A DNA stretch of 64,000 nucleotides, taken from assembly GCF_000150275.1 (NCBI RefSeq), contig NW_002060961.1:1272569-1336568 (forward strand). Reading direction: 5' to 3'. This DNA is from Trichoplax adhaerens. Its lineage: Eukaryota; Animalia; Placozoa. Shown here one piece after another: positions 24,202 to 56,540 of this stretch. The notes under the pieces are model-generated. The model saw nothing but the letters and a program-made list of their open reading frames with translations, was not told the DNA's origin and made no database searches. Made by a program: the position numbers and the translations under genes. Position 1 is the first letter of the stretch. Every line of letters begins with the position of its first letter.

Positions 24202-24271
24202 ATGCGTATCGTGACAACACTGCTGCTGTTCGCTGTTTTGGTTGGTACTCTACCTGAACAACTCCAAGCAG
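24202..24271 (+). CDS. adhesion GPCR exon 1: signal peptide
   Basis: MRIVTTLLLFAVLVGTLPEQLQA followed by a phase-1 donor (g|gtgaaa). Confidence 0.8.
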
Positions 24272-27200
24272 GTGAAATTGATTATGATTACATTAGTTAA
24301 AATATCAGTTTATCAACCTGTAGCTGAAGGGAATGTTTTCAGCTAGTTGTTCTGAATTTATCTATATTGTCTGTATTTTATATTATAGCTCTTCCAACAA
24401 TCACCTTACATCCTAAAAGTACGACTGTTATTCAAGATGCCAGAGTTACAATATCATGCCAAGCTTTCGGTGCTTCAAGTACTGTCATAAAATGGTTTAA
24501 GGATGGATCTCTTATGCCGAGTTCAAGCTTCACCAAAAGTTATTCTTTTGGCCGTCTTTCAAGTCAACTTACTCTGTCAAAGGCCAGTAACAGTGATCAG
24601 GGTTCTTATCGCTGCGAATTCAGCAATACTAATGAAGCAGTCCGTAGTCGTTCGGCCACATAATCGTTTACGGTATGCTATGCACGATGTAAAGTTAATG
24701 AAATAGTTGGATCTTATGACATCCATGTACAGTAGAAGAATCAAATATCTTTCGCCACATCTAGCATATTATTCGAGTAACTCATTTTTAAATGCCTGTT
24801 CTAATTATGGATTAACGCCATTTCAGTTCAAACTGACAAATCGTACTTAATTCTATTACTTTAGGTTATGATAATATAAAATCATGAATAGAGTACTAAG
24901 TCTATAATATCACTGATTGCTGCAATTAAAGTATTTTCTACTATGCTTAAGATTCACAGTTACAGATATTGAATCAAAGCCAATTATATCTTTGACTGCT
25001 ATTCTTGCATAAAAATACATTCTTTATTTAAGGATGCTCAATAAGGAATTAAGTTATAGAAAAACTCCAGACAAATACTACATTGTATTAATTGATTTAT
25101 ATTGTCACAAAGCTATAATAATTCATACTGCCTTGAAAAGCTATTTCTGTTTCTTAGCATAAATGTGAATGAATTAATTTTAAATACTATGTAAGGTTTT
25201 TGAAATGTACTCTTGTTTAAAATCCGACGGCTTTACTTTTGATAGAAGTCCTTAAAGAGCCCAGCAATCGAGGTCGAGAATTTTACATCTCATTTCCTAG
25301 GCAGTATTCAAATTTTACCGTTAATCCTTATTTCCTGATAACCGCATCTGGTAAATCTGCAACAGTAAACGTGTTCAATTATCATTTGAACAAGAGTAAG
25401 CGATATTCCGTTGAATCAAACGAGACACTCGCAATTAACTATACTGGTATGACCGAAAGCAAAGGCATAGGATTAACTTCCGAAATTATCCGCATTGTAT
25501 CTGATCAAGAAATCAAAGTAACAGCTTACCAGCCGTATCTAAATCGCTCTGAAGCTTCTTTAATATTTCCGATTCCACTTTATGGCAAAAAATATGTTAT
25601 TGCAACCTATAAGCCAACTGTCAAAGCCAAATTTCTCATTCTGTCTCATCGAGAACATACTCACGTCAATATTACATTCCCTAAAAATACCTTGTATAAC
25701 GGTAGAATTTATAATAGAAGCTATCCACTGAATATAACATTGCAGAGACATCAAGTGTTTCAATTCCACAGCAAAAGCGATTTAACTGGAACAATCATGC
25801 AGTCTAATGAAACTGTCGGTATTTTCTCGGGTAATGAGTGCGCTAATATTCCTAGCCAAAGTAGTGTTTGCAATACTATGTTTGAACAATTTTTGCCAGC
25901 GTCAAAGTTGGGCCAAAGTTACGTTCTCTCTACCGTGTCTGCCAGAAATTCCGGTAATATCTATCGTGTCGTAGCGGCCTATGATAATACCACCGTTGAT
26001 ATTCCATCTCTATCTCAGACGCATACCTTAAATCAGGGTTATTATACAGAATTTGAGTTGTTTTATAACGAAGAAACAGTTTTAGTTTGTGATCTGCCAT
26101 GTTTGCTTGTTCAGTTTACCATTGGAGGAGGCTCAGATAGTCAACGATCTGATCCATTCCTGACTCTTGTACCGGCCATAGAACACTATAAATCCAATTA
26201 CATCGTCCATATTCCATCCATAGCGACAAGTCAATATCAAATTTATCATAACTACCTTGTGGTGATGATACCAGCAAGCTATCGTGATGGATTACTCGTG
26301 AATGGTAATAATTTAACTGGAATAACATGGCATACAGTTTTTACCAACGGAAGTCTCGACTATGCTTGCGCATCCATTGCTATTACCAATGCTACATATA
26401 CAGTCAGCCATGTCAGTGATCAAGTATCGTTTGGATTAATTCAGTATGGCTGGAGCAGTCAAGGGATAGCCTATGGATTTATGGGTGGTATACGAGAAAA
26501 CACCACGATAACTACATGTAAGCAGAAGATATTATCGTAATTTAAAAGCGTATTTGTCACTTCTGTACTTTAATGTAGTAATACAGTACTATATATATAA
26601 TGTATATATATATATAAAATAATGCTGTATCAGTTGATTGCTTACGAAAGAAACTGTTAATTTATAGATGTAAATCATTCCATTTCGATAACGTAGATGT
26701 GAGTAGTTCATGAAGATTAATAAGTAGCAATGATCAAATAAATGCAAAGACTCAGTATACATGTTTATATGATGCTTTCCCTTATAGCATATCAACTAAT
26801 CAATTATAGCAGACAGTTGGTATTATTTAGTGTATAACAAAACTGCTGAGTATTCTATTTCCATTTCTTGACTTAGTGATATTAATAACAGGTCAGATAT
26901 CTTTAATCTCTTGAGTGCAAATGTACCACGCGGTGTGTGACCGTGTCAAAATTGCTTATTCTCTACTATTAACTTCATAAGTGGAATTCTTATAATTTTA
27001 AATTCTTATTTTTAGTTTTTCCTCCGGTAATTACCCTTCAGCCAGACGATCAAAATAATACTCTTGGACAAACTATACAATTAGAGTGTACAGGAATCAG
27101 TAATCCTGCATCAACTTTAGTTTGGTTAAAGAATGGAATCCCCATAGCAAATACTGATGGTACAGCAACGATTCAGGGAAATCTTACCCATGGCAGTTTG

Positions 27201-30200
27201 ACGATATCGGCAGCTACGATAAATGATTTTGGCACCTACCAATGCCAATTTAGTAACTCAAGAGGAATAACTCTGAGCCGCAATGCATCCATCAGGATTT
27301 TTGGTAAAGTCTAATGAATATTTATGCGAATTTAATATATTACTATTGGTACTTTATATCAATTGTGGTTTTTTTAGCTTTACGTATGGCCTACTGTAGA
27401 TCGAAATGAGATGTAAAGCCCTATTTCATCTAGTTTAATTGAGCTACTATGCCAATTATTGTTGATATTTACAGCTATAAGAAATTTCGATACTTTCTTC
27501 GTTAATTACAAAGTAGAATATTTATTTTAAAGCTTAATGTTATGCTGCTATGCTCCAATATTAAGGTAATAGGGTCTAATTAGGATCACCTGCCAAAATA
27601 CCTCGTTTAGTGTTGCATAGAAAAAACTGCTCTTGTTTCGTACTTCAGAACCCTACCATATCTTATACAACCATTATTCGTTGTAAAAATATTTTGACCT
27701 TCGTTATGATCATCAGCAAACAGTTAAAATTTAAGTTAGTATGACTCAGTATATCGCATCTTTAGCAGCTTTTTAGTAATTAGCAACGCTCATTTTGCAC
27801 AATAACATCTAGTCTAACGTTTTGGCTTTCTCTCATCTAGCAGAAAGGCAATTTCTATAATCCCATTTTAGTCTTATTGAATCAACTTCTACTCCTTCTA
27901 TTATGATATCTACTTACGTTGACCTATATTTCAGTGCTGCATTGCTTCATGTAACGATATCTCCTACTACTAAATCAATTGCAAAGAGCTATTTATTTAT
28001 TCTGTTAAATTTTATATAACAGCGCTGTTGTCATTGCTGCTTTTTCGCTCTCATTAAGAACAAATATTGACTCACATTAGGAGAACAAACTTCTTTATTT
28101 TAGTTACGAAATATCATTGCTTTACTTATACTAAAAGGAGTAGAATGGCTTTCTGACATTTTGCACACAATTCGTCATGAATATTGGAGCACAGTTTATT
28201 ATTGTATAAATATCGACTCATTTGTTTATCATTTTTGATTGAATATTTGCTTCGAATAGATTTCAAGCAAGTTTCGAGTCGTGGTCGGGATTTCTGTCTC
28301 GGAATTTATAGCCAACATCCTTCAGCAAATACTCCAATACCTTATATCCTTCTAACGGCATATAATCAAACTGCTAACGTTATTATTTTCAACAATTACT
28401 TTAAAAGCACCGTTAGACGTACTCTTGCTCCATATGAAACGGTAGCAATTAGTATAAGTAACTTCATGGTAAATGATGCTACAGGAAAAACATCCAAAGT
28501 GTTCCATGTTCTATCGGATCATGATATAACAGTCAAATTATACACAATATTTAAATTCACTACTGACGCAAGTCTAATTCTACCTTCTTCATTTTATGGT
28601 AAGAAATACGTAGCAGCAACTTATGTACCAGCCCTTAATGCAAGAATTTTAATCTTAGCCCATCAAAATGATACAACGGTTAGCATTCGCTTTCCTCGCG
28701 GTACCTATTACAATGGTCAACTTTATACTCGCGATCGACCATTATCTATCAAATTAGAACAATTTCAAGGCTTTTTATATCAAATAAATTATGATTTGAC
28801 TGGAACAGTAATTGAATCGGACAAAGGTGTTGCAGTTATAACCGGCAATAAGTGTGCTAACGTCCCAGTTGGGGTAACTTTCTGTGATGTTTTAGTCCAA
28901 CATCTCCCTCCTATCGAGGCGTTAGGTCGAAATTATATCTTAAAGGCGTTAGATGGTAGAAAGGCTTACACAGTCTATCGTGTCATAGCAGCGTATGATA
29001 ATACTGTAGTGACGAAATCCTATCCATTCCAGACCTTTATCTTGCAACGCCAAGGCTCATTTTACGAATTTCAATTGCTAAGCGGTCAAGGAACTAATCT
29101 TGTATGTGATAGGCCATGTTTGGTTGTTAAGTATGGAGTAGGAATCACTGCAGACAGCATCACTGGCGATCCTTTTATAATTGCTGTTCCATCAGTGGAT
29201 GATTTTGATTCTAATTATATTGCCAATGTTCCACGGGATATATCCAACTTTTTATCTTTGTTTCCGGTTAATTATTTGCAAGTTATCGTAGAGGAAAGTT
29301 TTAAAGAGGGGCTAACACTGAATGGGACTGCATTTCCTAAAGTCAATTGGCTACCAATACGGACACTTAGGAATAAAAACTACATGGTAGCTTCCATTCC
29401 TGTAGGTATTGGTACCTATAAGCTGGCTAATAACAATAGTAATGCCACTTTTGGACTACTCCAATATGCTTGGAACAGTCAATCGACATCTTATGGTTTA
29501 TCAGCTGGTATTAAGGCAAAGATATTCATTTCATGTAAGTTTAAAAATTCCTCATTTATTTTCTAAGCTTTATCGTTAAATTATCTAGACTCCTATTAGT
29601 AGATACTTCCTCTAAATTGAGCTTTTCTGGTTAATAGTGCATTTTAATTTTGGAAGATTATCATTCTATTCAAATTTTTTATTGATGCCATAATTTTTTA
29701 ATCATTAATACTAATCTAGCTTGTGCAATGCCACCAATAATTTCGGTTAGGGAAACGACAGACCTAAATAACTAATATCTTACTCTGTGAGATAACAGTT
29801 TCCGAGAGGAGTCAAAACTATTTAATGAAGTATACTGCCTTCAAAATTCTGATTTAATTACCCCTATACAAAATAGGGGGGGGGGCTGTAAAAATTTAAT
29901 TCATAGAGAAAATATGTTTAAAGCATTCATCAGCGAATAGTATTTCAAGTATTATGCTCTTTTCTTAAACTTCGATCACTGCATCCACAGCTATCCAAAC
30001 TTGACAACTATAATTCCAAATAAACTATCGATTTTTGCTAGCAAATGTCTTGTAATGAAGCATCAAATTGAAATATTATTACTTTTGATAGCTATATTTC
30101 AAATATTGAACAGTGTACAGAAATCTTTCTGATTCGACTTTAACATCTTCCTATATATATCCTTATAAGTCATAGAAATCGCTATAATATTAAGTGTAAA

Positions 30201-33200
30201 AAGTAATTAATCATTTCAATGAGTAATTTATGATTATTGTTTTAGTGGATTATCCAAAGATTACGCAACATCCTGAAAGTGCAAATTTGCTGAATGGCAG
30301 TACAGCCNNNNNNNNNNNNNNNNNNNNNNNNNNNNNNNNNNNNNNNNNNNNNNNNNNGGAGAGCCGTTAGAAAATTATGATAACATAACGAATATTGATT
30401 ATTCAACTGTGAATAGTCTTTTATATCTACCAACTTCGGAGTTAAGCAGTGCAGATAATTACCAATGTCGGTATTCAAACTCTAAAGGAATAGCCATTAG
30501 TAATAAAGCCAACCTTTATGTTTACGGTATATATATATTTATGCTAAAATATTGGCATAGAATTGATTTTAAGACATGTAGTTAGCAATATTCTATTTAT
30601 TTTCATGATAATATGCATGCCTTAAATTAATTTCATTTACCGCATACTTTATCCGCAGAAATATTTTCAACAGCGTCCCTTAAGACTGCTGTAGGAGGAA
30701 ACATAACTCTATCTTGCTATGCTATTGGTTCGCCATTACCGACAATTACTTGGATGAAATCCGGTGAAATATTGTTGGAGTTTAATGATACAGAGTTGCT
30801 TGTTCGTTGAAAATGTAACATTGGAAGACAGTGGAGATTATCGTTGTACATTATCAAACCATATAGGCATGATATCAAGTAAAATTTCCAATATAATTGT
30901 TTATGGTAAGTCTTTTATTATTAATTAAAAATGTCAAGGTTTAATCTCTTAAACCTCAATGACAATGTACTGGAAACTTTGATTCATTTAAGATTCATCC
31001 AAGGATGAGTGATTAAGCTCTAATGAATTAATAGTTGAAGTAGATAATAAACAATTAATAGTTCTTACCGTAATTATTTAATACCGCTTGTTAATAGCCT
31101 AAACTGAAAGTCTTTTTTGGAAATTTCTATAGCGTACCCCATAATTGAAAATCTTACTGAGAGTGTTATGGTACCAAGAGGAAAAGTAATCGACTTACAG
31201 TGCCAAGGTTCTAGTTTGACGAAACCAGTGATGATATCATGGCTCAAAAACAATCTAATTTTAAGCCCTAACCAGTATATCATAACGCAGATAAATATTA
31301 CCGAAAATACAGTAGCGAGCCAATTAATGATAAATCCAGCAACCTATAATCATTCGGATATTTATCGATGTCGAGTTTATAACCCACATGCGGCCGTTCT
31401 ATCATCGAATATCGCAATTGTAATTCAAGGTATGGTACAGCAATGTGCCTAGTAGCGATAATAATTTATGTCCCCAAAAAGTTGGCCTAGATTTAGTTCT
31501 TTCTCAATCATTTGTATATATTTGTCATTCTCGCAGATCCGCCAAATCCAGTTCGTAATCTATCGATTAGCAACATAACAGCAGACAGCATTTCAGTCTC
31601 ATGGCTTCCACCTAAACATGATGGCTACTCGCCTATCATGAATTATACCGTCGAACTATTAAATGATCAGTCTTTACTGGTCATTAAGAATTGCTCATCT
31701 AGCCTGATTCCTACTCAGTGTCTTACTTTGACTACATCAGCAACTTTTCAAGGTCTTAAACCATTTACCGTGTATTACTTAAGAACATGGGCTAATAACG
31801 TGATAGGAAACAGTACAGCAAGCACACTTCAAGTTAAAACTGATGAGGCTGGTAAGATTACTAAATTTACTATGATAATTTTCAATATGCCGCTGTGCAT
31901 TAAAAATTTCTTGGCAAACTGTTACGTAGAAAAATAGTGATTAATTAAAAGTTCTAAATCAGAAATTTAAAAGTGTACATAAAAATATAATCAGATCTAA
32001 GATATATTGTATGCTAGTATTATCGTTATGCGAATATTGCCTAATTAGTTCTCAATTTACGTTACAGCCCCATCTCTTCCGATTCGCGCAGGTATAGCGT
32101 TAGGCTATAACTCGTCTAGTATTCAAATTAATTGGAAACCACCTGTAATAACCAATGGTATTTTGGGCTATCGAGTCTATCAATGGCGATCAAATCAAAC
32201 TATCAAAACATTAAAGAACTCTGTTTTAGTTTATGATGGCAGAAGCTTTCAAGCTAGTGCGACCAACTTAGAAGCAGATCATCTCTACTACTATCAAATA
32301 ATTCCTTATAACATAAAGTATGGCTACTTGGGTATAGCGAGTGAATTCATGAATGGAACAAGCCACGAGGATGGTAAATATATCGTAGTTACCGAATGAG
32401 TTTTATTATAAATATCTGCTCGATGGTAACTGACTAAATTGGGAAATTAATTGAGCGATACTACATAATAATATTAAGTGCCCTAAAATGCAGTGGTTCA
32501 AGTTACGGATATTACAAGGAAAAGATTACTTTGTATGTCCGTGCAATTATCTTCCAAAAAGTAATTAATATTTTAATCTTATAGAATCTTTAGTGAAAAG
32601 CAACAAAATTTAGGTCTTAGTCATATAAATGAAAGCGTTATAGCATTTAGTTGTTTATTTAACAATTTTTTTAGTTTTTGGTGCTATACTTATCTCTGTC
32701 AGGAGAGTATCAGTAGAATCCTCAGTTAGTTAAATCTTGTCGATTTGTAAGTCAGAAATTGTAAAGAAATACTAGGGAAAAATCCTTCAAGATGTTTGAT
32801 GTAACGATTCTGTCTGGGAATGTATTATTATTACTATTTATTAATGGCACTATACAACCAAAGGATTACTACATAGTATCATTAAATAAATTTTAGTAAA
32901 TGAAAATGTTTCATACAACATTGGGGATACCAGTATATTTTGTGAATTTATACAGTATATACACGATCACTATCCTATATACACGTATGACAAGTTTGCT
33001 TATAGCAATTGAAATTTATGATAAAGTACATTTATTATACCTAATTTAAATCAAATATCATCATTGAAATTTACTATACTTCACAATCCAAGGATTATTA
33101 TATAGTATCATTAATCGAAATTTAGTAAACGAAAATTATTCAATATGGGGAATATTGGTAAGCATTATAAATTTAGACACCGTAAACGCGATCGGAATTC

Positions 33201-36200
33201 AAACTATTAATTGTTTGCTTATTATAATTGCAACATAGAGTAAAGTGTATTTCTTAATTATGCCAAATTAGATATCGCAGGAATTGCTGATGATAAATCA
33301 ACAAATTTATTTTGGATAGCCTATAATAATATTTTACTGCTAACAGTTTCCTCTCTTGATTATGATTATATAGCACCAACAGCATACCCACGTAATATAA
33401 CTCTAATCAATTCATCATCAACTTCACTTTCTCTTCTTTGGCATACCATTCCTTTATCTGACCATAATGGTGTCATTATTCAATATCGAATTCGTTATAA
33501 TGCTACTCAGTGGAACCATTATGGAGAAGTTTATATCAGCGGAACAGCCAATATGACAACACTAACCAATTTAATGGCTTATACAACTTATAAAATTATA
33601 ATGAGTGCTGCCACTTTCGTCGGATACGGACCCGAAAGTCCGATAATATCAATGACTACGAATCAATCGGGTTAGATAACCTCTTTTTAATGGTATTTTT
33701 ATGATCGTAGGGGTGCTTTATGATATTATTAGTTTAGATTACTTTACCAGTAACTTATCAATCAGATAAATACTAGAATTAAAAACAGTTATATAATACT
33801 ATAAAAGTCTAGTCTTTAAGTTAGTACATTGTACTTACTGCATATACTTCACTAAATGGACTGCTTGCTAAAAAAACGGCGTAATATTTTATGTTGATTA
33901 GGCATTGCAGTAATTCGTAAAATAAAAAAAGTTTATGCCTAGTCAATCCTATACTACCATTTAAACTAAATATCTTTTTATATCGTCTCAATAATTACCA
34001 TTTAAATTGCATATAGTATTTCTTTTTTGTTACAATAACTAAGCATCTAAATTATTTTACCTGTAAAATTATAAGGTTATATCCGCCTTCTCATACTTTA
34101 AAAAATAACTTTGATTTAATATACTCATATACTGTCGTTTTCGTCATCAGTACCAAGTTTCTATCCTTTGGAAGTAAATGCTACGGCTATATCAGCTACT
34201 GCAATAAATGTGACGTGGAAGCCGCCACCCATGCTACATAGAAATGGAATTATAACCAGATATAGTGTACAGTACAATTCTAGTCTTGGCAATAGTGGAG
34301 GAATTATTTTCCTGAACGGGTCTTTAATGGCCGCAACTTTGAGAAATCTGCTTCCTTTTACTAATTATTCAATCACCTTGAAGGCCGCTACTATAATTGG
34401 GTTTGGACCTCAAAGTCCTAATATTACAGTAAATACGTGGGAAGCAGGTTAGCATGTAATTTGATTTTATATTTTCAAATCTGTTGTTATATAGATCAAA
34501 TGTATTATTTATTCTACTTTATCGATTTAACATCATGTTAGTACCTCAATCTTATCATCGAAATATTAGCGGCAAACCATTATCTGCTAAAGCTCTCTAA
34601 TTAGCTAGCTGCCACTTTCTTTAACCGATCGAAATGGCATTATAATAAGTTATAGAATACATTATAATTCAACTAGAGACAGTCATCACGGATCCCTTCT
34701 AGTTACGGCTCCAGCATTATTAACAATTATCAAAAATATGAAGCCATATACACAGTACTTCTCAACAGTAGAAGCAGTGACTAGCGTTGGATTTAGTCCC
34801 AGGTGTCCAACTTTAGTATTAACAAAAAGTCAAGCAGGTTGCTTTATGACTTATACATTATAAAAGCCTTTGCAATGAATATTCACCTCATTTGATGTAC
34901 AAATGGCTTTAGTTATACAGTATATCTCAGATAACCATATACCTTTTACTGATTCATGCTTAAATCTTATTGAACGATTGTACGCTCATTTATACTTCCA
35001 AAACTCTCTCTATGCTTCATATTTTAATTATATTGATTCATCATCGTGCATTATTGATTATAATTATGGCACGCAAAAATCTCAGTAAATTGTTCTAAAT
35101 CTACTTTTCGACTTTAAATGTTGCCGCAAATATCAACTTAAAGCTAAGACTATAATTTCCGCTGATTTTAATTAGCGATATTTATCATACTCAAATTTCT
35201 TCAGTTCGAGTTACTAGTAGTAGGATCGTTGGAGTCATAGTAGATCTAAATCTTGCATGAAAATTGCTCACTTTAATTTGATTTTAATTTACTTGATTTA
35301 TCAGCACCTACGTCATATCCTCAAAATCTTACCTTGTTGGCAGCATCCTCTTCCACCATTTACGTCAATTGGCAACCACTGGCCTTTTCTGATCGCAATG
35401 GTTATATAATTAATTATAGTCTAAGATATAATTCAATAAAGTTGAACTCCAGCGATACAATTTTTGTCAATGGCAGTATGAATTCAACAGCCTTAACCAA
35501 TTTATCCCCATTCACTACCTATAATATCGTCATTCGAGCTGCAACTGTCATTGGATATGGTCCTCCCAGTCCAAGTAAAGCAGCTACGACTCATCAAGCA
35601 GGTTTGAAGGAGGCATTGACTTAATAGAAATACTTTACGCGTGCTTTTACTTCCATTTAGAGACTTAATATTAGTAAATTGACGAAAATTTATAGTTCAT
35701 GTCATTGCAACTAAATTTATCTAATGTTACAGTACCTAGCTCCTATCCAACAAAGAGTAATGTCGTAGCAACATCAGCTACAAGTCTGGTCGTTTCTTGG
35801 CAAGCTCTTTCAGAGAGAGATTGGAACGGTGTAATAACTTCCTTTACCGTAACCTATTGGCATACTTCTGACATGTGGGATTATCATGGCTCTATTCAGG
35901 TTAATACAGCAACAAAAAATACGTTAATAAAATCGTTATCACCATATACTGTGTATAATGTTACTATCAAAGCTGCTACAAAAGTCGGCTATGGGCCTGA
36001 AAGCCCTATAATCTCTGCAAAAACTCATCAAGCAGGTAATGAAAGTGTACAAAGCTATTTCGAATCATTTACATCTAGCATATCCTTGTTGCCGCAGTAT
36101 TTATGGAGTTAAAACTTACTTATCATATTTAGCGCCTACTACAAGTCCTCAAATACGAATTTTATTCCGTGTATCGAATAACAGTGTTCAGATCCAATGG

Positions 36201-39200
36201 CAGGTTGCAATTAATATGAATACCGACCATCTCTGACTAAACTCACCTACTCATGTATGCCATTCTAATTAGTTTTATGCTTTTTAAAATTTGTATTACT
36301 AGGTTATCCAAGAAAGGAATAGAAATGGAGTTATATTGGGATATTATTTATTCCTGAATAACATGAAATTTAATATTATCGAAAATCGTACACTTTATTT
36401 AAATGAAACAACTTTCGACGGTGGCTTGAGAAACTGTACAGCGCGTAATTTGAAATATTTCTCTCGGTATCAAATTTCGTTGCAAGCATTTACGGTTGCT
36501 GGCGTTGGCCCTACTAGTAAAGGATATACCATAGATACATTAGAATCAGGTAAGACTCATTTCACTTAAAAATAATGCTTAAGTAATTTAACTCCGCTGA
36601 AAAGGTATGCTTATTGATATATACTTAATCTCTAAACTATTTGTTAACAATTTGAACAGTGCCTACTGCTCCTCCTCAGGTAGTTAATATAGCACCCACT
36701 ATACTCGGAGTTACTACAGCCAACGTTTCATGGACTATGCCACCAGTCATCCATCATAATGGTATAATTAGAGGTTACTATCTGAAATATTTTCGAATTA
36801 AATTTCCAATTAATCAGACCGTGATCAAGATTGGAAACAATACTCAGCATACACTTCTGAATCTTCAACCGAAGCAAAATTACTCTATACAAATTGCTGC
36901 CTCAACCTCGGTTGGAATTGGACCGTATACCAGAGCTCTTATTTACCAAACTCGTGAAGCAGGTATCTATCTTCTATTCAATTTACTAGCTAACTAAACT
37001 ATTTATGTTTTCTCATCTATCTGCAATTTTTTTAGTGGGGCCTGTTGTTACTCTATCACCTCAAAGCGTTACTGTAGTAGCCGGTAATGATGTCAATTTA
37101 GAATGCAGAGCAACGAGCGATCCCTACCCAACTGTGCAATGGAAAAAAGATGGTTTACCAGCTAGTTCAGTATACACAGTTATCTCCAATTTAGGATATA
37201 GCAGATTAAGAATTAAGTACAGCAATACTGGAGATAGTGGTTCCTATCAATGTCAGTTTACCAACGTTAAGGGCTCAGTGTTATCTTCCATTGCTAAAGT
37301 ATTAGTCGAAGGTGAGAATTAATTTTCTGCTGAAATAAAGATTTGCACAATTTTGATTTTAGATAATCGATTTGACAATATCCCACCCCTAGATAAAAAC
37401 ACTACTGGATTTTGTTTGGGCGAGGTATTAAATAATATGCGATGGGCAAAGACTGGTGCCGGTCAAATTGCAACAGCAGCCTGTCCAATAAGTATACAAG
37501 GTGATTCTAGAAACAATTTTCTCCAAATTTTCTGTAGATGTTGTAGCTATTATCGCTAATTATCATCAATAAGAGCAATGCTGAACTTAAAATACATATT
37601 TAATTTGAAATTGCGACATCAGATAAACGTTTACATATTCATATAAATGGTTTAAATACATTGGTTTATTATCCTAGGAAATGCAACGCGCTTATGCAAG
37701 CTTGGCAGTAACGGAATATCATCTTGGGAACCAGTAGATACGACTGGATGTAAGACTCCCTTCGTCTCCGCTATAGTCAGTTTGGTAAATTTATTCGTCT
37801 ATTATAAGTTCTAATTTCATTTATTTCATTCAGCATGATTGAAATTTTCTAAAATAACTGAAAAAATTTCTGGATAATAGGAGGATATATTAGACAAACA
37901 GGGCAAAAATGCTACAAGTCAAGTCATGACTGAATTGGATGTGGTAACTGCAAATAGAACTTTATTTGGAGGAGATATTGTAGCTACGATATCAGCACTT
38001 GAAAAAATTAACCGAGTTTCACAAATAGTAGATAAACCGTTATTAGAGGTTAGCGTTCTTTGATGTTGATTGTTGAGAAGCCATTTCTCTCATCTCAAAA
38101 ATTAGACGTGCGCATGTGAACTATTTGATAAGCAGAAGATTGCATTTTTACTAAAAATTTATATTATTATTAAAGAGCAAGTGATGTTGTTAAAAATGTC
38201 ATTGTAAGAAAGTTTCTGCCGTATCGTACTTTGACTCATCCTCTAACTTTTCACAACTACTGTTTTCTGGTTTTACTGCACCACAGAAATTTATTAAGAT
38301 TCAAAGTAATTTATTCAATGTCCGAAATAAAGAAGGTTGGAAATTTGCAAAGAAAGTGAGTAAAAGATTTCTTATACGCTTTCGTGAGTGAACAGAGATT
38401 CTGTTACTTAATCCGATAAATGCATAATTGTTAATAGCCATGAATTTTATCGCTATCTTTTATTATTTTCAGTAACATTTAATACAATTTAACTGGTATT
38501 TAATAGTTTTGCGGAGATTCAAATGGCAAAAAGTTGTCTATAATGGATAATTTAGAAGACTATGCCAGTAAATTTGATACTGCCGCTGGCAAATCCAATA
38601 TCTCTTCCTTGATCGGTGATATAGGTATAATTAAATTGTGGTCATATCAGCTTAAAATTTCATTTAAACCTGCATTAGAGCAAATAACGCCTTATTATTA
38701 AAATTTCTCACGTGTAACTCTTAAGAATTAAAATGTGGGGTAACTAAAAGTGTTACTGCATGTATAAATGTTAAATGTTGGAGGACGGTCGGTAATGGAT
38801 AGGTCATACTTCAATTATGGAAGATTCACGAGTAAATTGATTGATTCATTTAAATTTTTTAGGCGTGTTTATTTACAACATTAGTAGCTCCTTTGAAATT
38901 CATGCTAACATTTCGTTTTCGGATGAATCAAATTTGGCCACTGGTATTGAATTAGTCATACCAGGATTAGCTGTCCAAAAGCATCAATGTAATAGCAAAA
39001 ATTTTAATTATACTCGTATAATGAGTTAGAATGTGTTATCAGTGCAAGTAGTAGATTGTATTAACTTTTTTCACGAGATGGCTTTTAAATTTCAGTTACC
39101 AAATTGGTCATCGTCGTCTATCAAACTTTGAAAGATCTCATGCCGGCAACACTTTCGACGGATAGGTAATAAAACGCAACTACATAAGAATTAACATAGA

Positions 39201-42200
39201 TACACTAATTTCCTTTGACTGGTGTGATAGATATTGTGAGGACTTTTATGTACAATAATAAAACATTCACGACTCATCAATGACAGCCACTTTTATTTAA
39301 ATTTTAATATATTTTGATTGGTAATTTATTAACGTAGCAGCAATAGCTCAGATAAAGCCGTCAGAGTCGTCAATTCTCATGTGTTCTCTGCATCATTGTA
39401 TCCGAAAATATCGCAAAGCTTGTCCTTTCCAATTCGAATGACATTTATAAATGGAAATGTAAGACTATCATTAACAAATTTATACCTTCTTTAATTCGCT
39501 TTACCGCTATAAATTGTACATCTTGCAAAATAGTATAAAAAGTATGTGCGATATGCCTTATTCGGTATTTTTAATGTATTTAGAAGATAAATAGCTGCTT
39601 AATATTTATATCTCAGATATGAATTATTAGTAGTTTCGTATAAATTGATTGCAAATATTTTAGAAATGCTTATGTTGACCTTCGTTACATGAATTTTAAA
39701 ATACTTTATTTGTTGTAATTCTATTTTGTTATTGCCAAATTTGTCATTTTGAAATTTTATTACTTTATGTAACGTATAAAGGAAGCCCGTTTTAAATATT
39801 AAATTCCATTTACCTTTAAAATATAGCCAATTGAAGCTGGAAATACTTCAATTCAACGCTCATGTTCATTTTGGCAACCAAAATCAAGGTAGTATACTAG
39901 ATTCATAAGCTTCAGCGACGATATAATAGAAATAAAATTGTGATAATATTGACTTTGTCAGTGATTTATGATAGCAAACTTCGATCTTCTTAATGCTAAA
40001 AGTATTGGTGATATGTGTGAGTTACTACTCTTACAATATCTCGTAATGGAAATAGTTATATTACTTATTATTTAACAAGAGCTACCTATCATTATTTGGG
40101 ACATTTAGTATTCGTGCATATTTATAATAACGTAGTTAGTATCCACATTCATAGCTTGCTTGTCCTAAAATAATTGATGTGAAATTACCTTCATAGCCAA
40201 TGCGGTTGGTCCCCATCAGGTTGCTGGATGGGTTCGGAATCGAATTCGACGCATACCGTTTGCTATTGCAACCATACAACTACTTTTGCCAGCCTATACC
40301 ATGATGTACAGGTAGTTCTTCAAGCAGTAAAGAATACGATTTTAAATAAATATTGAAATTTCAATTTTGCATAAAATTAATTAATTAAAAAGGTATTACT
40401 TAAGAAACTTTCTTTTAAAATGATGATTAATTTAACATAATTAATACTTAATGAAAATGTAGGTAGTAAATTAAGTACTTGAATTTTTTAAATATACAAG
40501 TATTTAGATATATAAATTCTCTTGCCTGATCAAATTACTAGATTTCGAAGTTCCAATTTGAAGTTATTACCTACGTTGGATGTGGTATTTCGTGTTTACT
40601 TCTAACTATTACAGCTGTCATATATCTTATTTTCTGGAGGTATGATCCGTAAATTCTTGCAAGATAAATCTTTTGTTAATAGATTAAATTCAATCCTAAA
40701 CGAGTCATAAGAATGGAAGCTACTTAAAAATTATTATTTTCCTAACTTAAAACTTTATATTATCCTATTTGTGAAAGATGGATGAAAGTAATATAGCACT
40801 GCATTTAAACGTTGTATATCATTAGCGCTAACAGATTAATAAATTTTTTTAGATCAACCGTTACATCTAGATCGTTTCAGTGGTATATAAATATTGATTC
40901 TTCTATACTTACTTGCTAGCTACTGCTATTTAATGCATTATGTACTTAACTTTAATTGCTCAATTATATTAATTATAGGAAAAATAGGAAAACGCTTACA
41001 TTTATAAATCTCAATATCTTTGTCTGGCTTTTGCTTGCTAATATAATTACCATTATTGGCCTACCGCATACTCAGCCAGCGGTAAATGAATCAGTGCGAG
41101 AAAGTTTCTGATATTAAAATATCGAAAATATTATTATAGACATCATGCCTGATGTACGATGAAATTAATAGCCATAAAATTCAATAATGATTACCAAATA
41201 ATATTCTTTTTAGCAACTGTGCGCCGGAATTGCAACACTCCTTCATTTTACCATACTGGCAGCTTTTGCTTGGATGATGTGCCAGGCCATCCATCTAGTA
41301 ATGCAATCAACTCGTAGATTAACGAAAAAGATGTACAAGCTGTACAGTTGCATTGGCTATAGTAAGTGTACTAGATCGAAATTGTACTTATTTTTGATAC
41401 AGATATTTACAGTGCCATAACGCACAGTAGCTTAAAATTTTCATATTGCAATAGAGAATGATATAGATTGACCAATGAAATTTATAACCTGTTTTTTCTC
41501 ACTAATAAACGCGTTCTTGTTCCCTAACTAGTTTTGCCATTAGTGGCAGCCGTTGCAACTGCTGTGGTGACAATTGTTCTGACGGGGATTAAGAATTATC
41601 TTACAGATAATGTGTAAGAATGTAAAATGTATAGCTCCTGATTGTTGTTCAATTATAATTTATCTTTTAAGTAGCAGTAATTGCATATAATGCTTGAAAT
41701 TCAATCATTACTATTTAGCTCATTTCACTATCGTATTTATATTGTTAAAAATGCCTAGGTGTTGGTTAAGAAGTAAACCGCTCATAATTTCTGGATTTAT
41801 TGGCTTGACTCTGTCTATGACGCTCGTAAGAAATATTCTATTCTTTCAGTTATAGTATTTGATAAAAACCTCCTTTAATTTTTCTGTTTAGCTAAGTAAC
41901 TGCCATACTTTAAAAACCATTTTTGAAAATAATAGCTGTGTATCAGAGGCTATAATCTAATATAAGCAAACATTTTTAAGTCATCCATTTTAATTGCTTA
42001 TACAATATTATTACTTAAAAGTTCAATTAGTGATGTTATCAAAATAAACAAAAGATCTAGTACTAAACGTACTGGAAATTTTTGATATAAAAATAGCCAA
42101 TTGTAAGTCCATAGGTTGGACGTACTGATTTATCCATTCTAAGACTGGATGTCCTTTGAATTTTTGTAAAACTTAAGAAATTATTTTTTTTCTATGACCA

Positions 42201-43774
42201 AATATCAAATAGATAACTATAATGGCAATTATACTTGCCAGTAAGAATTTTACAAATGCGAAAAGTGAAAATCTAGAGAAGGGACAGGAAGAGTTTTCTA
42301 TTTATAAGTCAGTATCGCGAGTGCTTGCTGTTTTATAGTTTATACTAAGATTCAATGAATTATTAAGATTAACTAGTATCCTAATATATTCGCTTCATTT
42401 ATTTGGGTTCATAGGCATTATCTGATCAGGGCCTTTTTTCTGCTCTTATTGATAGCTGTTGGTTGGACTTTATTTGTTTTGTTCATCATATATAATCATA
42501 TCATATTGCAATATGCCTTCGCAATTCTTAGTTTTCTACAGGTATTGGATTAATTTGGAACTTTTCTTTTTCTTTATTGATTTCTTTAACTAATTTAAAG
42601 CTGACTATTATTATGAATGCCATACATAGATATTTAGACTTTCGGAGTTGTAAATATGTAGACAATTTAATTCACGTACTAGATTACTTCACAATATATT
42701 AACAATATTTTATCAATTAGGGACTGTATGTATTTGTATTTTATGGCATTCAAAAGATAATTCTGAAAAATGATGATTGGGTAAATGCAGCACTTAAACG
42801 TAGCAAATAGTTTTATTTCTTAAATTGAAATTTACTAAAACTACGACAATAATAAAGTATTGAAATACTACGTACTAAAATTATGCTGAGCATGAATTAA
42901 TTTTTATTAAAATTCATCAAATAGGAGAAATCATCAGTAAAGACAATGGATACAGGTCGCGGTGATTCTTTTACATCCAGAAGGTATTGCGATTTATTCT
43001 GACTCATTAAAATAAATTGGAGTTATTTTCATACGGTGCAAGGCTTTCGCTTCAGCTATTCCTTAAAATGTGATAACTATTCATCGTACGAATGGTTACA
43101 TTATTTTAGTAGTAGTAATAAACAATAACATTATTCTATAGTCTGTACAAAGCATTTATTACTGTTTGATGTTGTAATCACGTTAGCTTAGCTTGTATTC
43201 TTACTGGCGAAGTTCATGTATTCGATAAATGTCTACAGTTTTAAGAGGATCATTCAGCTAACTAAATAATTTTAAACTTAGCTGTGCGGTACTCTTATGA
43301 CTTATATTACAGTACTTGATAGTAGTTACCTAAATAAGGATTAGCCCATTAAAAGATGGAATAACCTATTAAAGTGCTTCTAAATTAGTTTAGGATATAC
43401 TTCATAGCGGCATAAATATTTCCTTTCTAAGCTACTTTATAATGCAGTTAATAATTACTACTCGAATACCTTTATGATTAGAAAAACTGGGCCACCAGAG
43501 CCAGATTCTATTAATGTTTACGAAGATACTGATGTAAATAACGTTGCTTACGAGGAAGTAATGGCAAGTAGAAACATTAGACACATTCATGATGTAATTT
43601 ATTCATTATAAATTCGCTCACTACCTAAATTTTCCTATTTTACAAATGGAGTGTAAATATATGCACTGTATGTTTACAATTAATTTATACGCACTTTATC
43701 ATAACCATGATTTTTTACCACTGATACAGATTGAAACTCCACCATCAAGTATGGAAGATTCGGTCCGGTTTTAA
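24202..43774 (+). CDS. giant adhesion GPCR (~41 exons, ~3000 aa): SP-Ig-IgGFc-Ig-IgGFc-Ig-Ig-Ig-FN3x9-Ig-HRM-GAIN/GPS-7TM-tail; three ectodomain exons carry frame lesions
   Basis: Hand-spliced, phase-consistent GT-AG exons (* = lesion): 24202-24271, 24389-24672*, 25246-26517, 27016-27303, 28260-29534, 30246-30526 (gap), 30659-30905*, 31133-31429, 31537-31851, 32068-32373, 33374-33670, 34151-34447, 34542-34837*, 35305-35601, 35733-36035, 36133-36203, 36303-36549, 36660-36962, 37036-37311, 37393-37500, 37678-37784, 37881-38048, 38287-38355, 38507-38624, 38863-38988, 39096-39165, 39338-39458, 39827-39888, 40197-40311, 40542-40639, 40853-40882, 40979-41081, 41214-41361, 41532-41613, 41759-41825, 42213-42307, 42415-42541, 42721-42780, 42925-42983, 43482-43593, 43730-43774. 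GPS CSFW...WSPSGC...CYCNHTTTFASL and class B2 TM motifs TYVGCGIS, LLHF..LAAFAWM, CWL, QYAFAILSFLQG. Confidence 0.85.
25246..26517 (+). CDS. adhesion GPCR exon: IgGFc-binding (FCGBP N-terminal-like) domain 1
   Basis: GREFYISF, YGKKYVI, DLTGTIMQSNETVGIFSGNECANIP, EQFLPASKLGQSY, DPFLTLVPAIEHY; 1272-nt phase 1-1 exon. Confidence 0.8.
28260..29534 (+). CDS. adhesion GPCR exon: IgGFc-binding domain 2
   Basis: GRDFCLG, YGKKYVA, DLTGTVIESDKGVAVITGNKCANVP, QHLPPIEALGRNY, GDPFIIAVP; 1275-nt phase 1-1 exon collinear with domain 1. Confidence 0.8.
30308..30357. other. assembly gap (50 N) inside an Ig exon
   Basis: N run. Both flanks translate as one Ig domain (YPKITQHPES...GSTA / GEPL...DNYQCRYSN), so the true gap is probably a multiple of 3. 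Confidence 0.95.
31537..36962 (+). CDS. adhesion GPCR: array of nine fibronectin type III domains (one dead exon at 34542-34837; one domain split over two exons)
   Basis: Repeating P..P.N.T...S.TS..V.W.P....NG.I..Y...L.P(F/Y)T.Y.I.I.A.T..G.GP pattern in 297-315 nt phase-1 exons. Confidence 0.9.
32854..33270. repeat. intronic diverged direct duplication (~229-bp period)
   Basis: acaa.c.aaggatta.ta.atagtatcattaa....atttagtaaa.gaaaat-like block begins at 32854 and at 33083. Confidence 0.7.
37393..40311 (+). CDS. adhesion GPCR: hormone-receptor (HRM) domain plus GAIN domain with GPS
   Basis: C-LGE...W-AKT..G..A...CP|GNATRLC......W..VDTTGC (HRM); LFGGDI, SNLF....W, VVYQTL, VNSHVFSAS, CSFW, WSPSGC, CYCNHTTTFASL (GAIN/GPS). 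Confidence 0.88.
40542..43774 (+). CDS. adhesion GPCR: class B2 7TM domain and cytoplasmic tail
   Basis: Seven hydrophobic segments over 9 exons, including a 30-nt micro-exon at 40853-40882; the tail (3 further exons) ends ...NVYEDTDVNNVAYEEV...MEDSVRF* (TAA 43772-43774). Confidence 0.85.
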
Positions 43775-48583: not shown

Positions 48584-48848
48584 TCGAGAAAGCCAAGCGG
48601 TCAAGCGATTAGCGTGTTCTTTCATCGTTCTACTTCTACTTGAGAGAGAAACGATATTGCTATCCTATTTCTTGTGGTAAATCTTGTTGAAATCTATTGC
48701 TAAGTAGTAAAAATTGGTTCAGGGAAAATCGTTAGGTTAACTGATCTAGAGGAGAGCTTTTACTTTGTATGTTTACAGTTGGAAATTGATTCGCATTTCG
48801 TCTTGATTACTACAGTACAGACAGAATCGATCGTTAATCACAACAGTC

Positions 48849-53200: not shown

Positions 53201-53364
53201 TAAGTAAAAATTGTCATATATTGTCTAAAGGTATAATTGAATAATAAATAAATCAATTATACATATGAATTTTATTATATTTGACCCTTTCAATTTATTG
53301 TACAATTAGGAATCATATTATTTGACATTCCCTAGGATAGGGGAGATAATTTTTTTTTCTACAG

Positions 53365-54463
53365 ACTATACTGAATTATACATGAAATTGACGTTGGCAT
53401 TTCGGCTCGCAGGTATAAATCGCGAAGAAAAAATCTTAAATTAATTGCAGAATATCTTATAGTATTGGTATCGGCTGTTAATTGTTTTTCCGGAGGATGA
53501 ATAAATTCATAATGTGGATACTTTGTAATTAATCGATCAATAAGCCATGGTTCATCAGTAACTACAAATATTCGTCTTTTAATAATGATTTTGCGCTTAG
53601 ATAAACCATTAAAATATGCATTCACTTTAATCATATATCGATCAATATCGAATATTTCGTTCTCCGTTTTTTTATCAGAACGCCTAATATGTAGACCAAC
53701 AATAGGTGATTGAAATTTGAATTCTTTTCGAGATTGATCTATCAATTGTTTTAAGTCACTACTAGGTTGTATTATGTATTGGGCTAGAACACCTATCCAC
53801 CAAGCTACAGGATCACATTTATATTGAACAACATCGTAAAATAGTTTTCTCGGCATACCATATCGGCAAATTGCAGGTGCTTTACCAAAATTTTGATATA
53901 GCAACCCAACTCTTTGCAATCTTATAATCTGAGGAATCTTATCAGAATTATTTTTAGCCAAGTTGTTGTCATAAATACGACTTGTCCATTTGACAGCCTT
54001 TTTGGCATTAGTTGTCACAATGTCATCTAACGTCGGTAGACTTGCATACGAATTACATGAAGTTATTTATAGTCAATCTCGAGGTCGACATTTTGCATCG
54101 CTTGATTTAGATTATCATGTTTTCGGATTTACTGCTAGCGGTGAAGGTCCATGGATTATGCAAGCCAAGAAAGATTGCGCTAGCAATGGGTCTGGTACTA
54201 TTGATTTACTCAAGGGAGATTTGTTAGATTCGTGTGTATCCATAAAGGAAAAGAAAAACATAGTCTATGGTTATTCTAAACGTTTAAAAAAGTTCGGACA
54301 CTTCCATCAATCATGTCTTTATTACCTTGCAGATAATCAAGACTATCCAGATTATAGCAAATCAGACGGATGGTATCAACAGCATATACCTGATATGAAA
54401 AGAATATCTACATTAGGGAATATTTGCATGAAATCGTCGATAACTGACATTGGTGTAATATAA
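53365..54463 (+). pseudogene. FUT8: FUT8-like copy B with an inverted catalytic segment (~53401-54009) and a missing block
   Basis: Minus-strand ORF carries WWIG, VGLHIRRSDK, IFVVTDE, DLYLRAE; its direct continuation LVVTMSSNVGRLAYE plus the SH3-like domain lies on the plus strand from ~54008; plus-strand acceptor ttttctacag ends at 53364. Confidence 0.85.
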
Positions 54464-56413: not shown

Positions 56414-56540
56414 NNNNNNNNNNNNNNNNNNNNNNNNNNNNNNNNNNNNNNNNNNNNNNNNNNNNNNNNNNNNNNNNNNNNNNNNNNNNNNNNNNNNNNN
56501 NNNNNNNNNNNNNNNNNNNNNNNNNNNNNNNNNNNNNNNN
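56414..56540. other. assembly gap (127 N)
   Basis: N run. Confidence 0.95.

What the first reader, a model, noticed from the sequence alone, without database searches (positions are those of the whole stretch)
24202..43774. ~3000-aa adhesion GPCR with two IgGFc-binding domains, six Ig and nine FN3 domains
Seen: about 41 GT-AG exons join with consistent phases from a signal peptide to a 7TM and stop, apart from three lesioned exons. Known: adhesion GPCRs are defined by GAIN/GPS plus a class B2 7TM; IgGFc_binding domains occur in the mucus protein FCGBP and in bacterial surface proteins; Ig+FN3 arrays are typical of receptor tyrosine phosphatases and DSCAM/L1-type molecules. I know of no characterised adhesion GPCR that combines these. 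Inference: an exon-shuffled chimera coupling a mucus-, glycan- or microbe-contacting ectodomain to GPCR signalling, possibly for immunity, feeding or substrate sensing. Automated annotation would probably split it into several genes.
Basis: partly seen in the sequence, partly recalled or inferred. Interest (0 to 1): 0.85.

Follow-up and report, generated by a model that had tools for sequence, protein, structure and literature searches.

The report
Placozoan adhesion GPCR with IgGFc-binding heads
This is a real, transcribed Trichoplax gene for a receptor of about 2,900 residues that carries two IgGFc-binding-type domains on a long Ig/FN3 stalk attached to an adhesion-GPCR core; it is one of about nine such genes in this genome, so it is an undescribed lineage-specific variant of a known receptor class, not a new kind of system.

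Summary
On the + strand, 24202-42810 (or 43774), 36-38 GT-AG exons encode a signal peptide, Ig, IgGFc_binding, Ig, IgGFc_binding, three Ig, nine FN3, Ig, HRM, GAIN/GPS and a 7tm_2 seven-helix domain.

- **Source:** Trichoplax adhaerens. The public model TRIADDRAFT_61038 (1135 aa) covers only 25449-32396.
- **Assembly gap:** it lies inside one Ig exon. Independent DNA and RNA contigs cross it with 57 letters instead of 50, which leaves the exon in frame.
- **One transcript:** an RNA contig joins IgGFc2 to Ig3, Ig4, Ig5, FN3-1, FN3-2 and FN3-3. The IgGFc and FN3 parts are therefore not separate genes.
- **Three "lesions":**
  - Ig4 is an assembly error. Every independent contig lacks one reference base.
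  - FN3-5 is truly decayed (a frameshift plus TAG at the conserved Trp) and is skipped in RNA.
  - Ig1 was not tested.
- **Family:** five paralogous loci are collinear with this one from IgGFc to 7TM. About nine loci show IgGFc followed by GPS on the same strand. This scan found a sibling before on other DNA of this genome (s1-734989, with an EGF stalk).
- **Literature:** no paper in the library links IgGFc_binding to adhesion GPCRs.
- **Ligand and function:** untested.

The parts
24202..24271 (+). Exon 1: ATG and signal peptide (MRIVTTLLLFAVLVGTLPEQLQA), ends in phase 1
   Evidence: Sequence read; translation; donor CAG|GTGAAA
24389..24672 (+). Ig1 exon with a lesion: 284 nt (one short of phase 1-1), in-frame TAA at 24661-24663
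   Evidence: Pfam Ig_3 3e-16. Not covered by reads, so an assembly error and a real lesion are both possible
25246..26517 (+). IgGFc_binding domain 1, one 1272-nt exon, phase 1-1
   Evidence: PF17517 2e-64; donor CAT|GTAAGC; AlphaFold model pLDDT 92
27016..27303 (+). Ig2 exon, 288 nt, phase 1-1
   Evidence: Pfam Ig_3 5e-17
28260..29534 (+). IgGFc_binding domain 2, one 1275-nt exon, phase 1-1
   Evidence: PF17517 1e-57; the RNA contig covers its 3' part and joins 29534 to 30246
30246..30526 (+). Ig3 exon containing the assembly gap 30308-30357; true length 288 nt
   Evidence: Both flanks read as halves of one Ig domain; DNA contigs of X1 and X3 and RNA contig X17 cross the gap with +7 letters
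30659..30905 (+). Ig4 exon; the reference carries one extra base near 30802-30805; true length 246 nt, in frame
   Evidence: All contigs of X1 and X3 and the RNA contig leave out 1 nt at 30802 or 30805; RNA joints 30526|30659 and 30905|31133
31133..31429 (+). Ig5 exon, 297 nt
   Evidence: Pfam Ig_3 7e-10; RNA joints
31537..31851 (+). FN3-1 exon
   Evidence: fn3 1e-14; RNA joints
32068..32373 (+). FN3-2 exon
   Evidence: fn3 2e-6; RNA joints
33374..33670 (+). FN3-3 exon
   Evidence: fn3 8e-12; RNA joint from 32373 to about 33374
34151..34447 (+). FN3-4 exon
   Evidence: fn3 2e-15; RNA joint 34447|35305
34542..34837 (+). FN3-5 pseudo-exon: 296 nt (frameshift) and TAG at the conserved Trp codon 34606-34608; skipped in RNA
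   Evidence: DNA contigs of X1 and X3 show no indel here; there is no RNA depth over 34600-35199 and the RNA joint bypasses it
35305..35601 (+). FN3-6 exon
   Evidence: fn3 8e-15
35733..36035 (+). FN3-7 exon, donor CAG|GTAATG
   Evidence: fn3 2e-14
36133..36203 (+). FN3-8, first exon (phase 1 in, phase 0 out)
36303..36549 (+). FN3-8, second exon
   Evidence: fn3 1e-4; conserved in all five paralogs
36660..36962 (+). FN3-9 exon
   Evidence: fn3 5e-11
37036..37311 (+). Ig6 exon, membrane-proximal Ig
   Evidence: Ig_3 5e-18
37363..37784 (+). HRM domain on two exons (37363-37500, 37678-37784)
   Evidence: PF02793 7e-4 and 2e-3, partial; the Cys/Trp pattern continues in the second exon
37881..39888 (+). 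GAIN region, seven exons: 37881-38054 (or 37902-38048), 38287-38355, 38507-38624, 38863-38988, 39096-39165, 39338-39458, 39827-39888
   Evidence: PF16489 3e-3 at the start; collinear conservation in paralogs; phases
40197..40326 (+). GPS exon: ...CYCNHT|TTFASLYHDVQ, carrying the cleavage triad H-x-T and the tethered-agonist sequence
   Evidence: PF01825 4e-10; alignment to ADGRG6 and ADGRL3
40542..42810 (+). 7TM domain on seven exons (40542-40639, 40979-41081, 41214-41361, 41532-41613, 41759-41825, 42377-42541, 42721-42810), with seven hydrophobic helices and a stop at 42808-42810
   Evidence: 7tm_2 hits (37.3 bits); translations; adhesion-GPCR-only PDB matches
43432..43774 (+). Optional C-terminal tail exons (43432-43557, 43730-43774), used only if the donor at 42781 is spliced; uncertain
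   Evidence: First gene-finder run only; no paralog conservation

Best explanation
This is one expressed Trichoplax adhaerens gene for a class B2 (adhesion) GPCR of about 2,870-3,010 residues.

**Layout:** signal peptide, Ig, IgGFc_binding, Ig, IgGFc_binding, Ig x3, FN3 x8 (a ninth, FN3-5, is a decayed exon that splicing skips), Ig, HRM, GAIN/GPS, 7TM and a short tail.

**Likely mechanism (inferred from the family, not shown here):**
- The two all-beta IgGFc_binding heads sit at the tip of a stalk of about 14 Ig/FN3 domains and bind an extracellular ligand.
- That ligand is most plausibly a glycan-rich surface such as matrix, mucus, algae or bacteria.
- The GAIN domain is cut at H-T|T.
- Pulling on the N-terminal fragment exposes the tethered agonist TTFASLY..., which activates the 7TM and a G protein.

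**Origin:** the gene arose by shuffling of symmetric phase 1-1 domain exons. It is one of about nine paralogous 'IgGFc-headed' adhesion GPCR loci in this genome.
For: - **Domains in order:**
- **Exon chain:** consistent phases and GT-AG borders.
- **RNA:** contig X17 joins 29534|30246, 30526|30659, 30905|31133, 31429|31537, 31851|32068 and 32373|about 33374, and a second contig joins 34447|35305. There is no RNA depth in the introns.
- **Gap and Ig4 lesion:** both resolved as reference artefacts.
- **Paralogs:** five loci are collinear from IgGFc through 7TM.
- **Family size:** 23 IgGFc_binding hits and 58 GPS hits in the genome, with nine same-strand IgGFc-then-GPS loci. 7tm_2 lies downstream in the window and in paralogs A, C and E.
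- **PDB matches:** the GPS and TM3 exons match only adhesion GPCRs.
- **Selection:** 24 listed RNA differences give 10 synonymous to 14 non-synonymous, against 23% synonymous expected by chance, with no stops.
- **IgGFc head:** it folds confidently (pLDDT 92). Its first subdomain resembles TM1070, the Anabaena sensory rhodopsin transducer (ASRT) and carbohydrate-binding-module sandwiches (Z 11.3 and 8.1).
Against: - No RNA evidence was obtained for exon 1 to IgGFc2, or for FN3-6 to the 3' end.
- The RNA comes from a closely related organism (coded B), not certainly from the window's strain.
- The Ig1 exon carries an untested stop and frameshift.
- GAIN subdomain A and HRM give only weak, partial Pfam hits.
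- Position -1 of the cleavage site is Thr instead of the usual Leu, so cleavage is not assured.
- The 3' end is ambiguous.
- Ligand, cleavage and G-protein coupling are all inferred.
- The SNP list is incomplete.
Confidence: 0.8

Rival explanations
1. It is a decaying paralog, that is a transcribed pseudogene. Lesions in the Ig1 and FN3-5 exons would show that this copy of a nine-member family is losing function, and the RNA would be residual transcription.
For: - FN3-5 has a real frameshift plus a nonsense codon, shared by both organisms' DNA.
- Ig1 has a stop and a 1-nt frame defect in the reference.
- Amino-acid variation is fairly high, 14 of 24 listed differences.
Against: - The FN3-5 exon is cleanly skipped, and being phase 1-1 its loss keeps the frame.
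- The third 'lesion' was a reference error, so Ig1 may be one too.
- Ig1 is also phase 1-1 and skippable.
- All other 34 exons are open with intact splice sites.
- Synonymous changes are enriched over chance.
Confidence: 0.1
2. There are two or more adjacent genes: a secreted Ig/IgGFc (plus some FN3) protein, and a separate FN3-HRM-GAIN-7TM receptor. They would be duplicated together as a block in the paralogs.
For: - Public annotation ends a model at 32396.
- No RNA joint was obtained between FN3-6 and the 7TM, or across 33670|34151.
Against:
- The downstream exons are all phase 1-1 domain exons, with no start codon or signal peptide of their own.
- Introns from FN3-6 to HRM are 51-131 nt, which leaves no room for a terminator and promoter.
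- Collinearity holds in five paralogs.
Confidence: 0.06
3. The gene is intact, but the IgGFc_binding heads serve homophilic or cell-to-cell adhesion or matrix assembly between Trichoplax cells, not sensing of food, microbes or glycans.
For: - Ig/FN3 arrays are typical of cell-adhesion molecules (established knowledge).
- No ligand data exist.
- The fold matches are only generic beta-sandwiches beyond the first subdomain.
Against: - PF17517 relatives are mostly bacterial surface proteins and secreted invertebrate proteins.
- The first subdomain resembles carbohydrate-binding-type sandwiches.

Neither point is decisive.
Confidence: 0.25

Closest known systems
Adhesion GPCRs with an Ig-HRM-GAIN-7TM base (vertebrate ADGRA2/ADGRA3, i.e. 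GPR124/125; named from my own knowledge)
   Same: A membrane-proximal Ig domain is followed by HRM, GAIN/GPS and a 7tm_2 core. The N-terminal fragment is long and modular.
   Different: ADGRA receptors carry LRR heads. This gene carries two IgGFc_binding domains, five further Ig domains and eight or nine FN3 domains. No orthology was tested.
Sponge (Amphimedon) adhesion GPCRs with Ig, fn3, HRM and GPS domains (PMC4302439, Fig. 4 legend)
   Same: Ig and FN3 repeats are combined with HRM, GPS and 7TM in an early-branching animal, as a lineage-specific expansion.
   Different: No IgGFc_binding domain is reported there. The relationship of the 7TM cores was not tested.
FCGBP and other PF17517 (IgGFc_binding) proteins
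   Same: The PF17517 domain matches over its full length (profile positions 1-297), twice.
   Different: There are no VWD/C8/TIL mucin-type repeats, and the protein is membrane-anchored through a 7TM. Trichoplax has no IgG, so the family name says nothing about the ligand here.
LAR-type receptor tyrosine phosphatases and DSCAM/sidekick-type Ig+FN3 molecules
   Same: An N-terminal Ig array is followed by an FN3 array. A Trichoplax sp. H2 paralog fragment is even named 'Tyrosine-protein phosphatase Lar, partial' (P0151).
   Different: No phosphatase domain was found in any scanned exon. The protein ends in GAIN plus 7TM.
Sibling locus in this genome noted by this scan (s1-734989): IgGFc-binding-like head + 27 EGF + Ig + HRM + GAIN
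   Same: The head, the Ig-HRM-GAIN-7TM base, the genome and the roughly nine-locus family are all shared.
   Different: Its stalk is made of EGF repeats instead of Ig/FN3, and it has one head where this gene has two.

Membership tests
Adhesion GPCR (class B2) | GPS motif directly N-terminal of the first TM helix | tested here: met
   PF01825 at 4e-10, 40.4 bits against a cut-off of 22.5. It aligns to the ADGRG6 and ADGRL3 GPS. The next exon holds TM1.
Adhesion GPCR (class B2) | Secretin-type seven-helix domain (7tm_2) | tested here: met
   37.3 bits over profile positions 18-126, against a cut-off of 20.6. Exon hits cover profile positions 3-29 and 76-125. Seven hydrophobic segments are present, with TM6 GW and TM7 QG motifs. 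TM6-7 exons alone gave no Pfam hit.
Adhesion GPCR (class B2) | Full GAIN domain (subdomains A and B, about 320 aa) upstream of the GPS | tested here: inconclusive
   Only a 3e-3 partial hit at the start. About 330 aa of paralog-conserved exons lie between HRM and GPS. The joined domain was not searched or folded, by rule.
Adhesion GPCR (class B2) | Autoproteolysis consensus H-(L/x)-S/T and a tethered agonist TxFAxLM | tested here: met
   The sequence is CNH-T|TTFASLY. His is at -2 and Thr at +1, and position -1 is Thr rather than Leu. Actual cleavage cannot be tested here.
Adhesion GPCR (class B2) | Single polypeptide linking the adhesive ectodomain to the 7TM | tested here: inconclusive
   RNA joints cover IgGFc2 to FN3-3 and FN3-4 to FN3-6. 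The rest rests on phases, short introns and paralog collinearity.
FCGBP (mucus IgGFc-binding protein) | N-terminal PF17517 domain | tested here: met
   Two full-length matches, 2e-64 and 1e-57.
FCGBP (mucus IgGFc-binding protein) | Repeated VWD-C8-TIL mucin-type units | tested here: not met
   None was found in about 50 scanned open stretches of the gene.
LAR-type receptor tyrosine phosphatase | Cytoplasmic tyrosine phosphatase domains | tested here: not met
   No phosphatase family appeared in any scanned exon. The C-terminus is a 7TM.

The most novel reading that the evidence does not exclude
The roughly nine IgGFc-headed adhesion GPCRs of placozoans would be a dedicated family of surface sensors. 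Their carbohydrate-binding-like heads would recognise algal, bacterial or mucus glycans and turn contact or pulling force into G-protein signals that steer feeding or innate defence in an animal without neurons. That would be an independent invention of 'pattern-recognition GPCRs'.
Probability: 0.2. Interest if true: 0.7.

Novelty: new variant of a known kind. Interest (0 to 1): 0.45.

Why it matters
- **A new head on a known receptor class.** Adhesion GPCRs are defined by what their ectodomains touch, and here a domain otherwise seen in mucus proteins and bacterial surface proteins caps such a receptor. It does so repeatedly, in about nine genes, in one of the simplest animals. That gives a concrete, testable candidate for how placozoans sense biofilm, food or microbes.
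- **A missed family.** Public annotation fragments these genes (a 1135-aa piece here, and a paralog named 'phosphatase Lar'), so domain-architecture surveys would miss the family.
- **A practical warning.** Of three apparent frame lesions, one was a haplotype-merge error in the reference and one is a skipped pseudo-exon. Neither kills the gene.

Tried and rejected
- **Joined model left out.** Whole-domain tests of GAIN and 7TM are therefore missing.
- **First gene-finder runs.** They patched frame lesions with spurious mini-exons and over-extended some exons. I curated by hand against paralog conservation and RNA joints.
- **Looking for the architecture elsewhere.**
  - blastx of 37300-44000 against the 150 best IgGFc_binding cluster representatives found nothing.
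  - A hydropathy and GPS-motif scan of 212 fetched proteins found no 7TM. P0146 has one long hydrophobic patch only.
  - The search for homologous proteins with P0001 sees only proteins of 624-1986 aa. It found no PF17517+PF00002 protein and no Trichoplax sp. H2 ortholog. Longer models could not be reached, so a blank here says little.
- **The look-up of encoding contigs for P0001:** no record.
- **Literature.** Five searches pairing 'IgGFc' or PF17517 with adhesion-GPCR or Trichoplax terms, or using the gene's accessions, found nothing relevant. The eLife 2025 GPCR paper has no supplements held. The placozoan secretory-cell paper does not mention the gene.
- **Fold searches.** Foldseek against the PDB gave only tandem beta-sandwich matches with TM-scores of 0.1-0.16, so no whole-domain fold relative. 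A sequence search of the PDB with the IgGFc head found nothing.
- **Run X18**, labelled 'RNA?', behaved like DNA, with contigs running through introns. It was not used as expression evidence.

Full report
**Source and public annotation**

The window is G000:C1396:1272569-1336568 of a 105.6-Mb, 1414-contig genome. The best database match to the first IgGFc exon is P0001, which is TRIADDRAFT_61038 / XP_002116964.1 / B3S9V2 of Trichoplax adhaerens, 1135 aa. tblastn places it at 25449-32396 only. It starts inside IgGFc1, cuts the second Ig exon at 27158, and jumps from 29533 to 31132 over two Ig exons and the gap.

**Observation**

Stop-free stretches on the + strand were scanned one by one, by reference. 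In order they gave:
- Ig
- IgGFc_binding (2e-64)
- Ig
- IgGFc_binding (1e-57)
- Ig, Ig
- nine FN3
- Ig
- HRM (partial, split over two exons)
- the start of GAIN (3e-3)
- GPS (4e-10)
- 7tm_2 (profile positions 3-29 and 76-125; in the six-frame genome search, 37.3 bits against a cut-off of 20.6)

I built a small exon-chaining script. I then curated its output against tblastx conservation with paralogs, the raw sequence and RNA joints.

The result is 36 exons from the ATG at 24202 to the stop at 42808-42810. Two further exons would reach 43774 if the donor at 42781 is used. That tail has no paralog support. All borders are AG/GT. Every Ig, FN3 and IgGFc domain sits on its own phase 1-1 exon, except FN3-8, which is split by a phase-0 intron. 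From HRM onward the phases are mixed but consistent. The corrected coding length without FN3-5 is 8601 nt, or 2866 aa.

**The gap, tested first**

The N run at 30308-30357 lies inside one Ig exon (30246-30526). The left flank reads as the start of an Ig domain (…PKITQHPESANLLNGSTA). The right flank reads as its second half (…YQCRYSNSKGIAISNKANLYVY).

DNA contigs of two independent runs (X1, organism A; X3, organism B) and an RNA contig (X17) all cross the gap with 7 extra letters. The true gap is therefore 57 nt. The exon is then 288 nt, the same length as Ig2, and is in phase 1-1.

**Transcript evidence**

One 2648-nt RNA contig (X17, a metatranscriptome of the closely related organism B) starts inside the IgGFc2 exon. 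It joins 29534|30246, 30526|30659, 30905|31133, 31429|31537, 31851|32068 and 32373|about 33374. These are exactly the curated borders. X17 has no depth in the intron bins.

This links the IgGFc/Ig part to the FN3 array and runs past the end of the public model. A second RNA contig joins 34447|35305, which is FN3-4 directly to FN3-6.

Not covered by RNA here:
- exon 1 to IgGFc2
- the joint 33670|34151
- everything from FN3-6 to the 3' end

For those parts the evidence is indirect:
- matching phases
- introns of only 51-131 nt from FN3-6 to HRM
- no start codon or signal peptide downstream
- paralog collinearity

**The three lesions**

1. **Ig4 (30659-30905, 247 nt).** Every contig of X1 and X3 and the RNA contig lack one base, at 30802 in one haplotype and at 30805 in the other. 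The depths with the deletion add up to the full depth. The reference therefore holds an extra base, probably from merging two haplotypes, and the exon is 246 nt and open.
2. **FN3-5 (34542-34837).** It is 296 nt, with a frame change near 34590 and TAG at the conserved FN3 tryptophan codon (34606-08). DNA contigs of both organisms show no indel there, so the frameshift is real and shared. The RNA skips the exon. It is a decayed, skipped pseudo-exon, and the protein has eight working FN3 domains.
3. **Ig1 (24389-24672, 284 nt, TAA at 24661).** It could be another reference error. One missing A would give the usual …ATIIVY ending. It could also be a second skippable phase 1-1 exon.

**Family**

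The genome has 23 PF17517 hits and 58 GPS hits. At nine places an IgGFc_binding exon lies 5-21 kb upstream of a GPS exon on the same strand:
- C1396 (this gene)
- C1397 at 0.47-0.49 Mb
- C1410 at 0.71-0.73 Mb
- C1410 at 7.42 Mb
- C1402 at 1.63 Mb
- C1402 at 1.68 Mb
- C1401 at 1.38-1.40 Mb
- C1412 at 2.85 Mb
- C1414 at 11.12 Mb

I fetched five of them. tblastx chains are collinear with this gene from IgGFc through Ig, the FN3 array, Ig, HRM, the GAIN exons, GPS and the TM exons, at 35-70% identity per exon. The C1397 locus also has two IgGFc heads. 7tm_2 hits lie downstream in the C1397, C1401 and C1402 (1.63 Mb) loci among those fetched, and at the C1414 locus.

My count agrees with that.

**Receptor core**

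The GPS exon reads …CYCNHT|TTFASLYHDVQ. It aligns with ADGRG6 (CLCNHL|THFGIL) and ADGRL3. His -2 and Thr +1 are kept. Position -1 is Thr instead of Leu.

The TM3 exon matches only adhesion GPCRs in the PDB (ADGRG6, D1, L3, L4 and others). Seven hydrophobic segments follow, with the usual TM6 GW and TM7 QG motifs.

The HRM Cys/Trp pattern runs across two exons, which explains the weak partial Pfam hits.

**The head**

An AlphaFold model of IgGFc1, built with a 40-sequence alignment, is confident (pLDDT 92.3, pTM 0.92) and all-beta.
- No PDB entry matches it by sequence.
- Foldseek gives only tandem beta-sandwich matches with TM-scores of 0.1-0.16.
- VIA-align matches residues 4-111 to TM1070 (Z 11.3, 102 residues aligned, rmsd 3.9) and to the Anabaena sensory rhodopsin transducer (Z 8.1). 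Carbohydrate-binding modules and complement/TEP MG domains follow at Z 5-7.

This is a hint of a sugar-binding-type sandwich and nothing more.

PF17517 relatives are mainly bacterial surface proteins, many with type IX secretion (T9SS) sorting domains, and secreted invertebrate proteins. None of the 212 proteins I fetched has a 7TM or a GPS motif.

**Selection**

Of 24 RNA-versus-reference differences listed within exons, 10 are synonymous. Chance would give 23% synonymous, and none creates a stop. This suggests moderate constraint. The list is incomplete, so the evidence is weak.

**Literature**

No paper in the library pairs IgGFc or PF17517 with adhesion GPCRs or Trichoplax, or names this gene. 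Sponge adhesion GPCRs with Ig, fn3, HRM and GPS domains are described (PMC4302439). The stalk and base are therefore not new. The IgGFc_binding head is.

**Verdict**

This is one expressed adhesion GPCR gene with an undescribed head, and a member of a lineage-specific family of about nine loci. It is a new variant of a known kind. The mechanism is inferred by analogy with other adhesion GPCRs, and none of its steps was tested: ligand capture by the heads, GAIN cleavage, and tethered-agonist activation.

**Surroundings**

- A pogo/Tc5-type transposase ORF lies at 3-1364 on the minus strand.
- Three intronless ACAD9/ACADVL-like ORFs flank the gene.
- FUT8-like genes lie at 53-63 kb on the minus strand.

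Noticed in passing
window 8479-10218, 16116-17873, 48807-50711 (+): Three single-exon ORFs of 580-635 aa encode full ACAD9/ACADVL-type acyl-CoA dehydrogenases. Local GC is raised to 0.36-0.39. Two lie upstream and one downstream of the receptor gene. An intronless tandem family in an intron-rich genome could reflect retro-copies or recent duplication.
   Followed up: partly
window 3-1364 (-): An open 454-aa frame carries DDE_1 (1.5e-41) and the Tc5 HTH domain. It looks like a pogo/Tc5-type transposase, apparently intact, running off the window's start.
   Followed up: partly
window 53362-54066, 60336-60803, 60791-62674 (-): Two FUT8-like alpha-1,6-fucosyltransferase genes or copies lie on the minus strand, with an assembly gap (56414-56540) between them.
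   Followed up: no
window 30802-30805, 34040, 34100: These are reference indel errors. All independent DNA contigs of two runs differ from the window by one base at each of these places. The exonic one mimics a frameshift and looks like a merge of two haplotypes.
   Followed up: yes
P0151 (Trichoplax sp. H2, 1019 aa, partial): This paralog fragment has PF17517 plus Ig and FN3 domains. It is named 'Tyrosine-protein phosphatase Lar, partial' in NCBI, probably because of Ig/FN3 similarity alone.
   Followed up: no
G000:C1412:787581-801744 (+): Four tandem IgGFc_binding hits sit in long open frames of 637-715 aa, with no GPS nearby. This is probably a secreted multi-IgGFc protein, a different use of the same domain in this genome.
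   Followed up: no
IgGFc1 model, residues 4-111 (window about 25257-25580): The first subdomain of PF17517 superposes on TM1070 (1nc7, Z 11.3) and the Anabaena sensory rhodopsin transducer (2ii7, Z 8.1). I found no paper in the library that describes the fold of this Pfam family.
   Followed up: partly
G000:C1396:1356144-1356239 (+), about 19.6 kb beyond the window's end: Another GPS hit lies on the same strand and contig, with no IgGFc hit near it. It is probably a neighbouring adhesion GPCR of another type.
   Followed up: no
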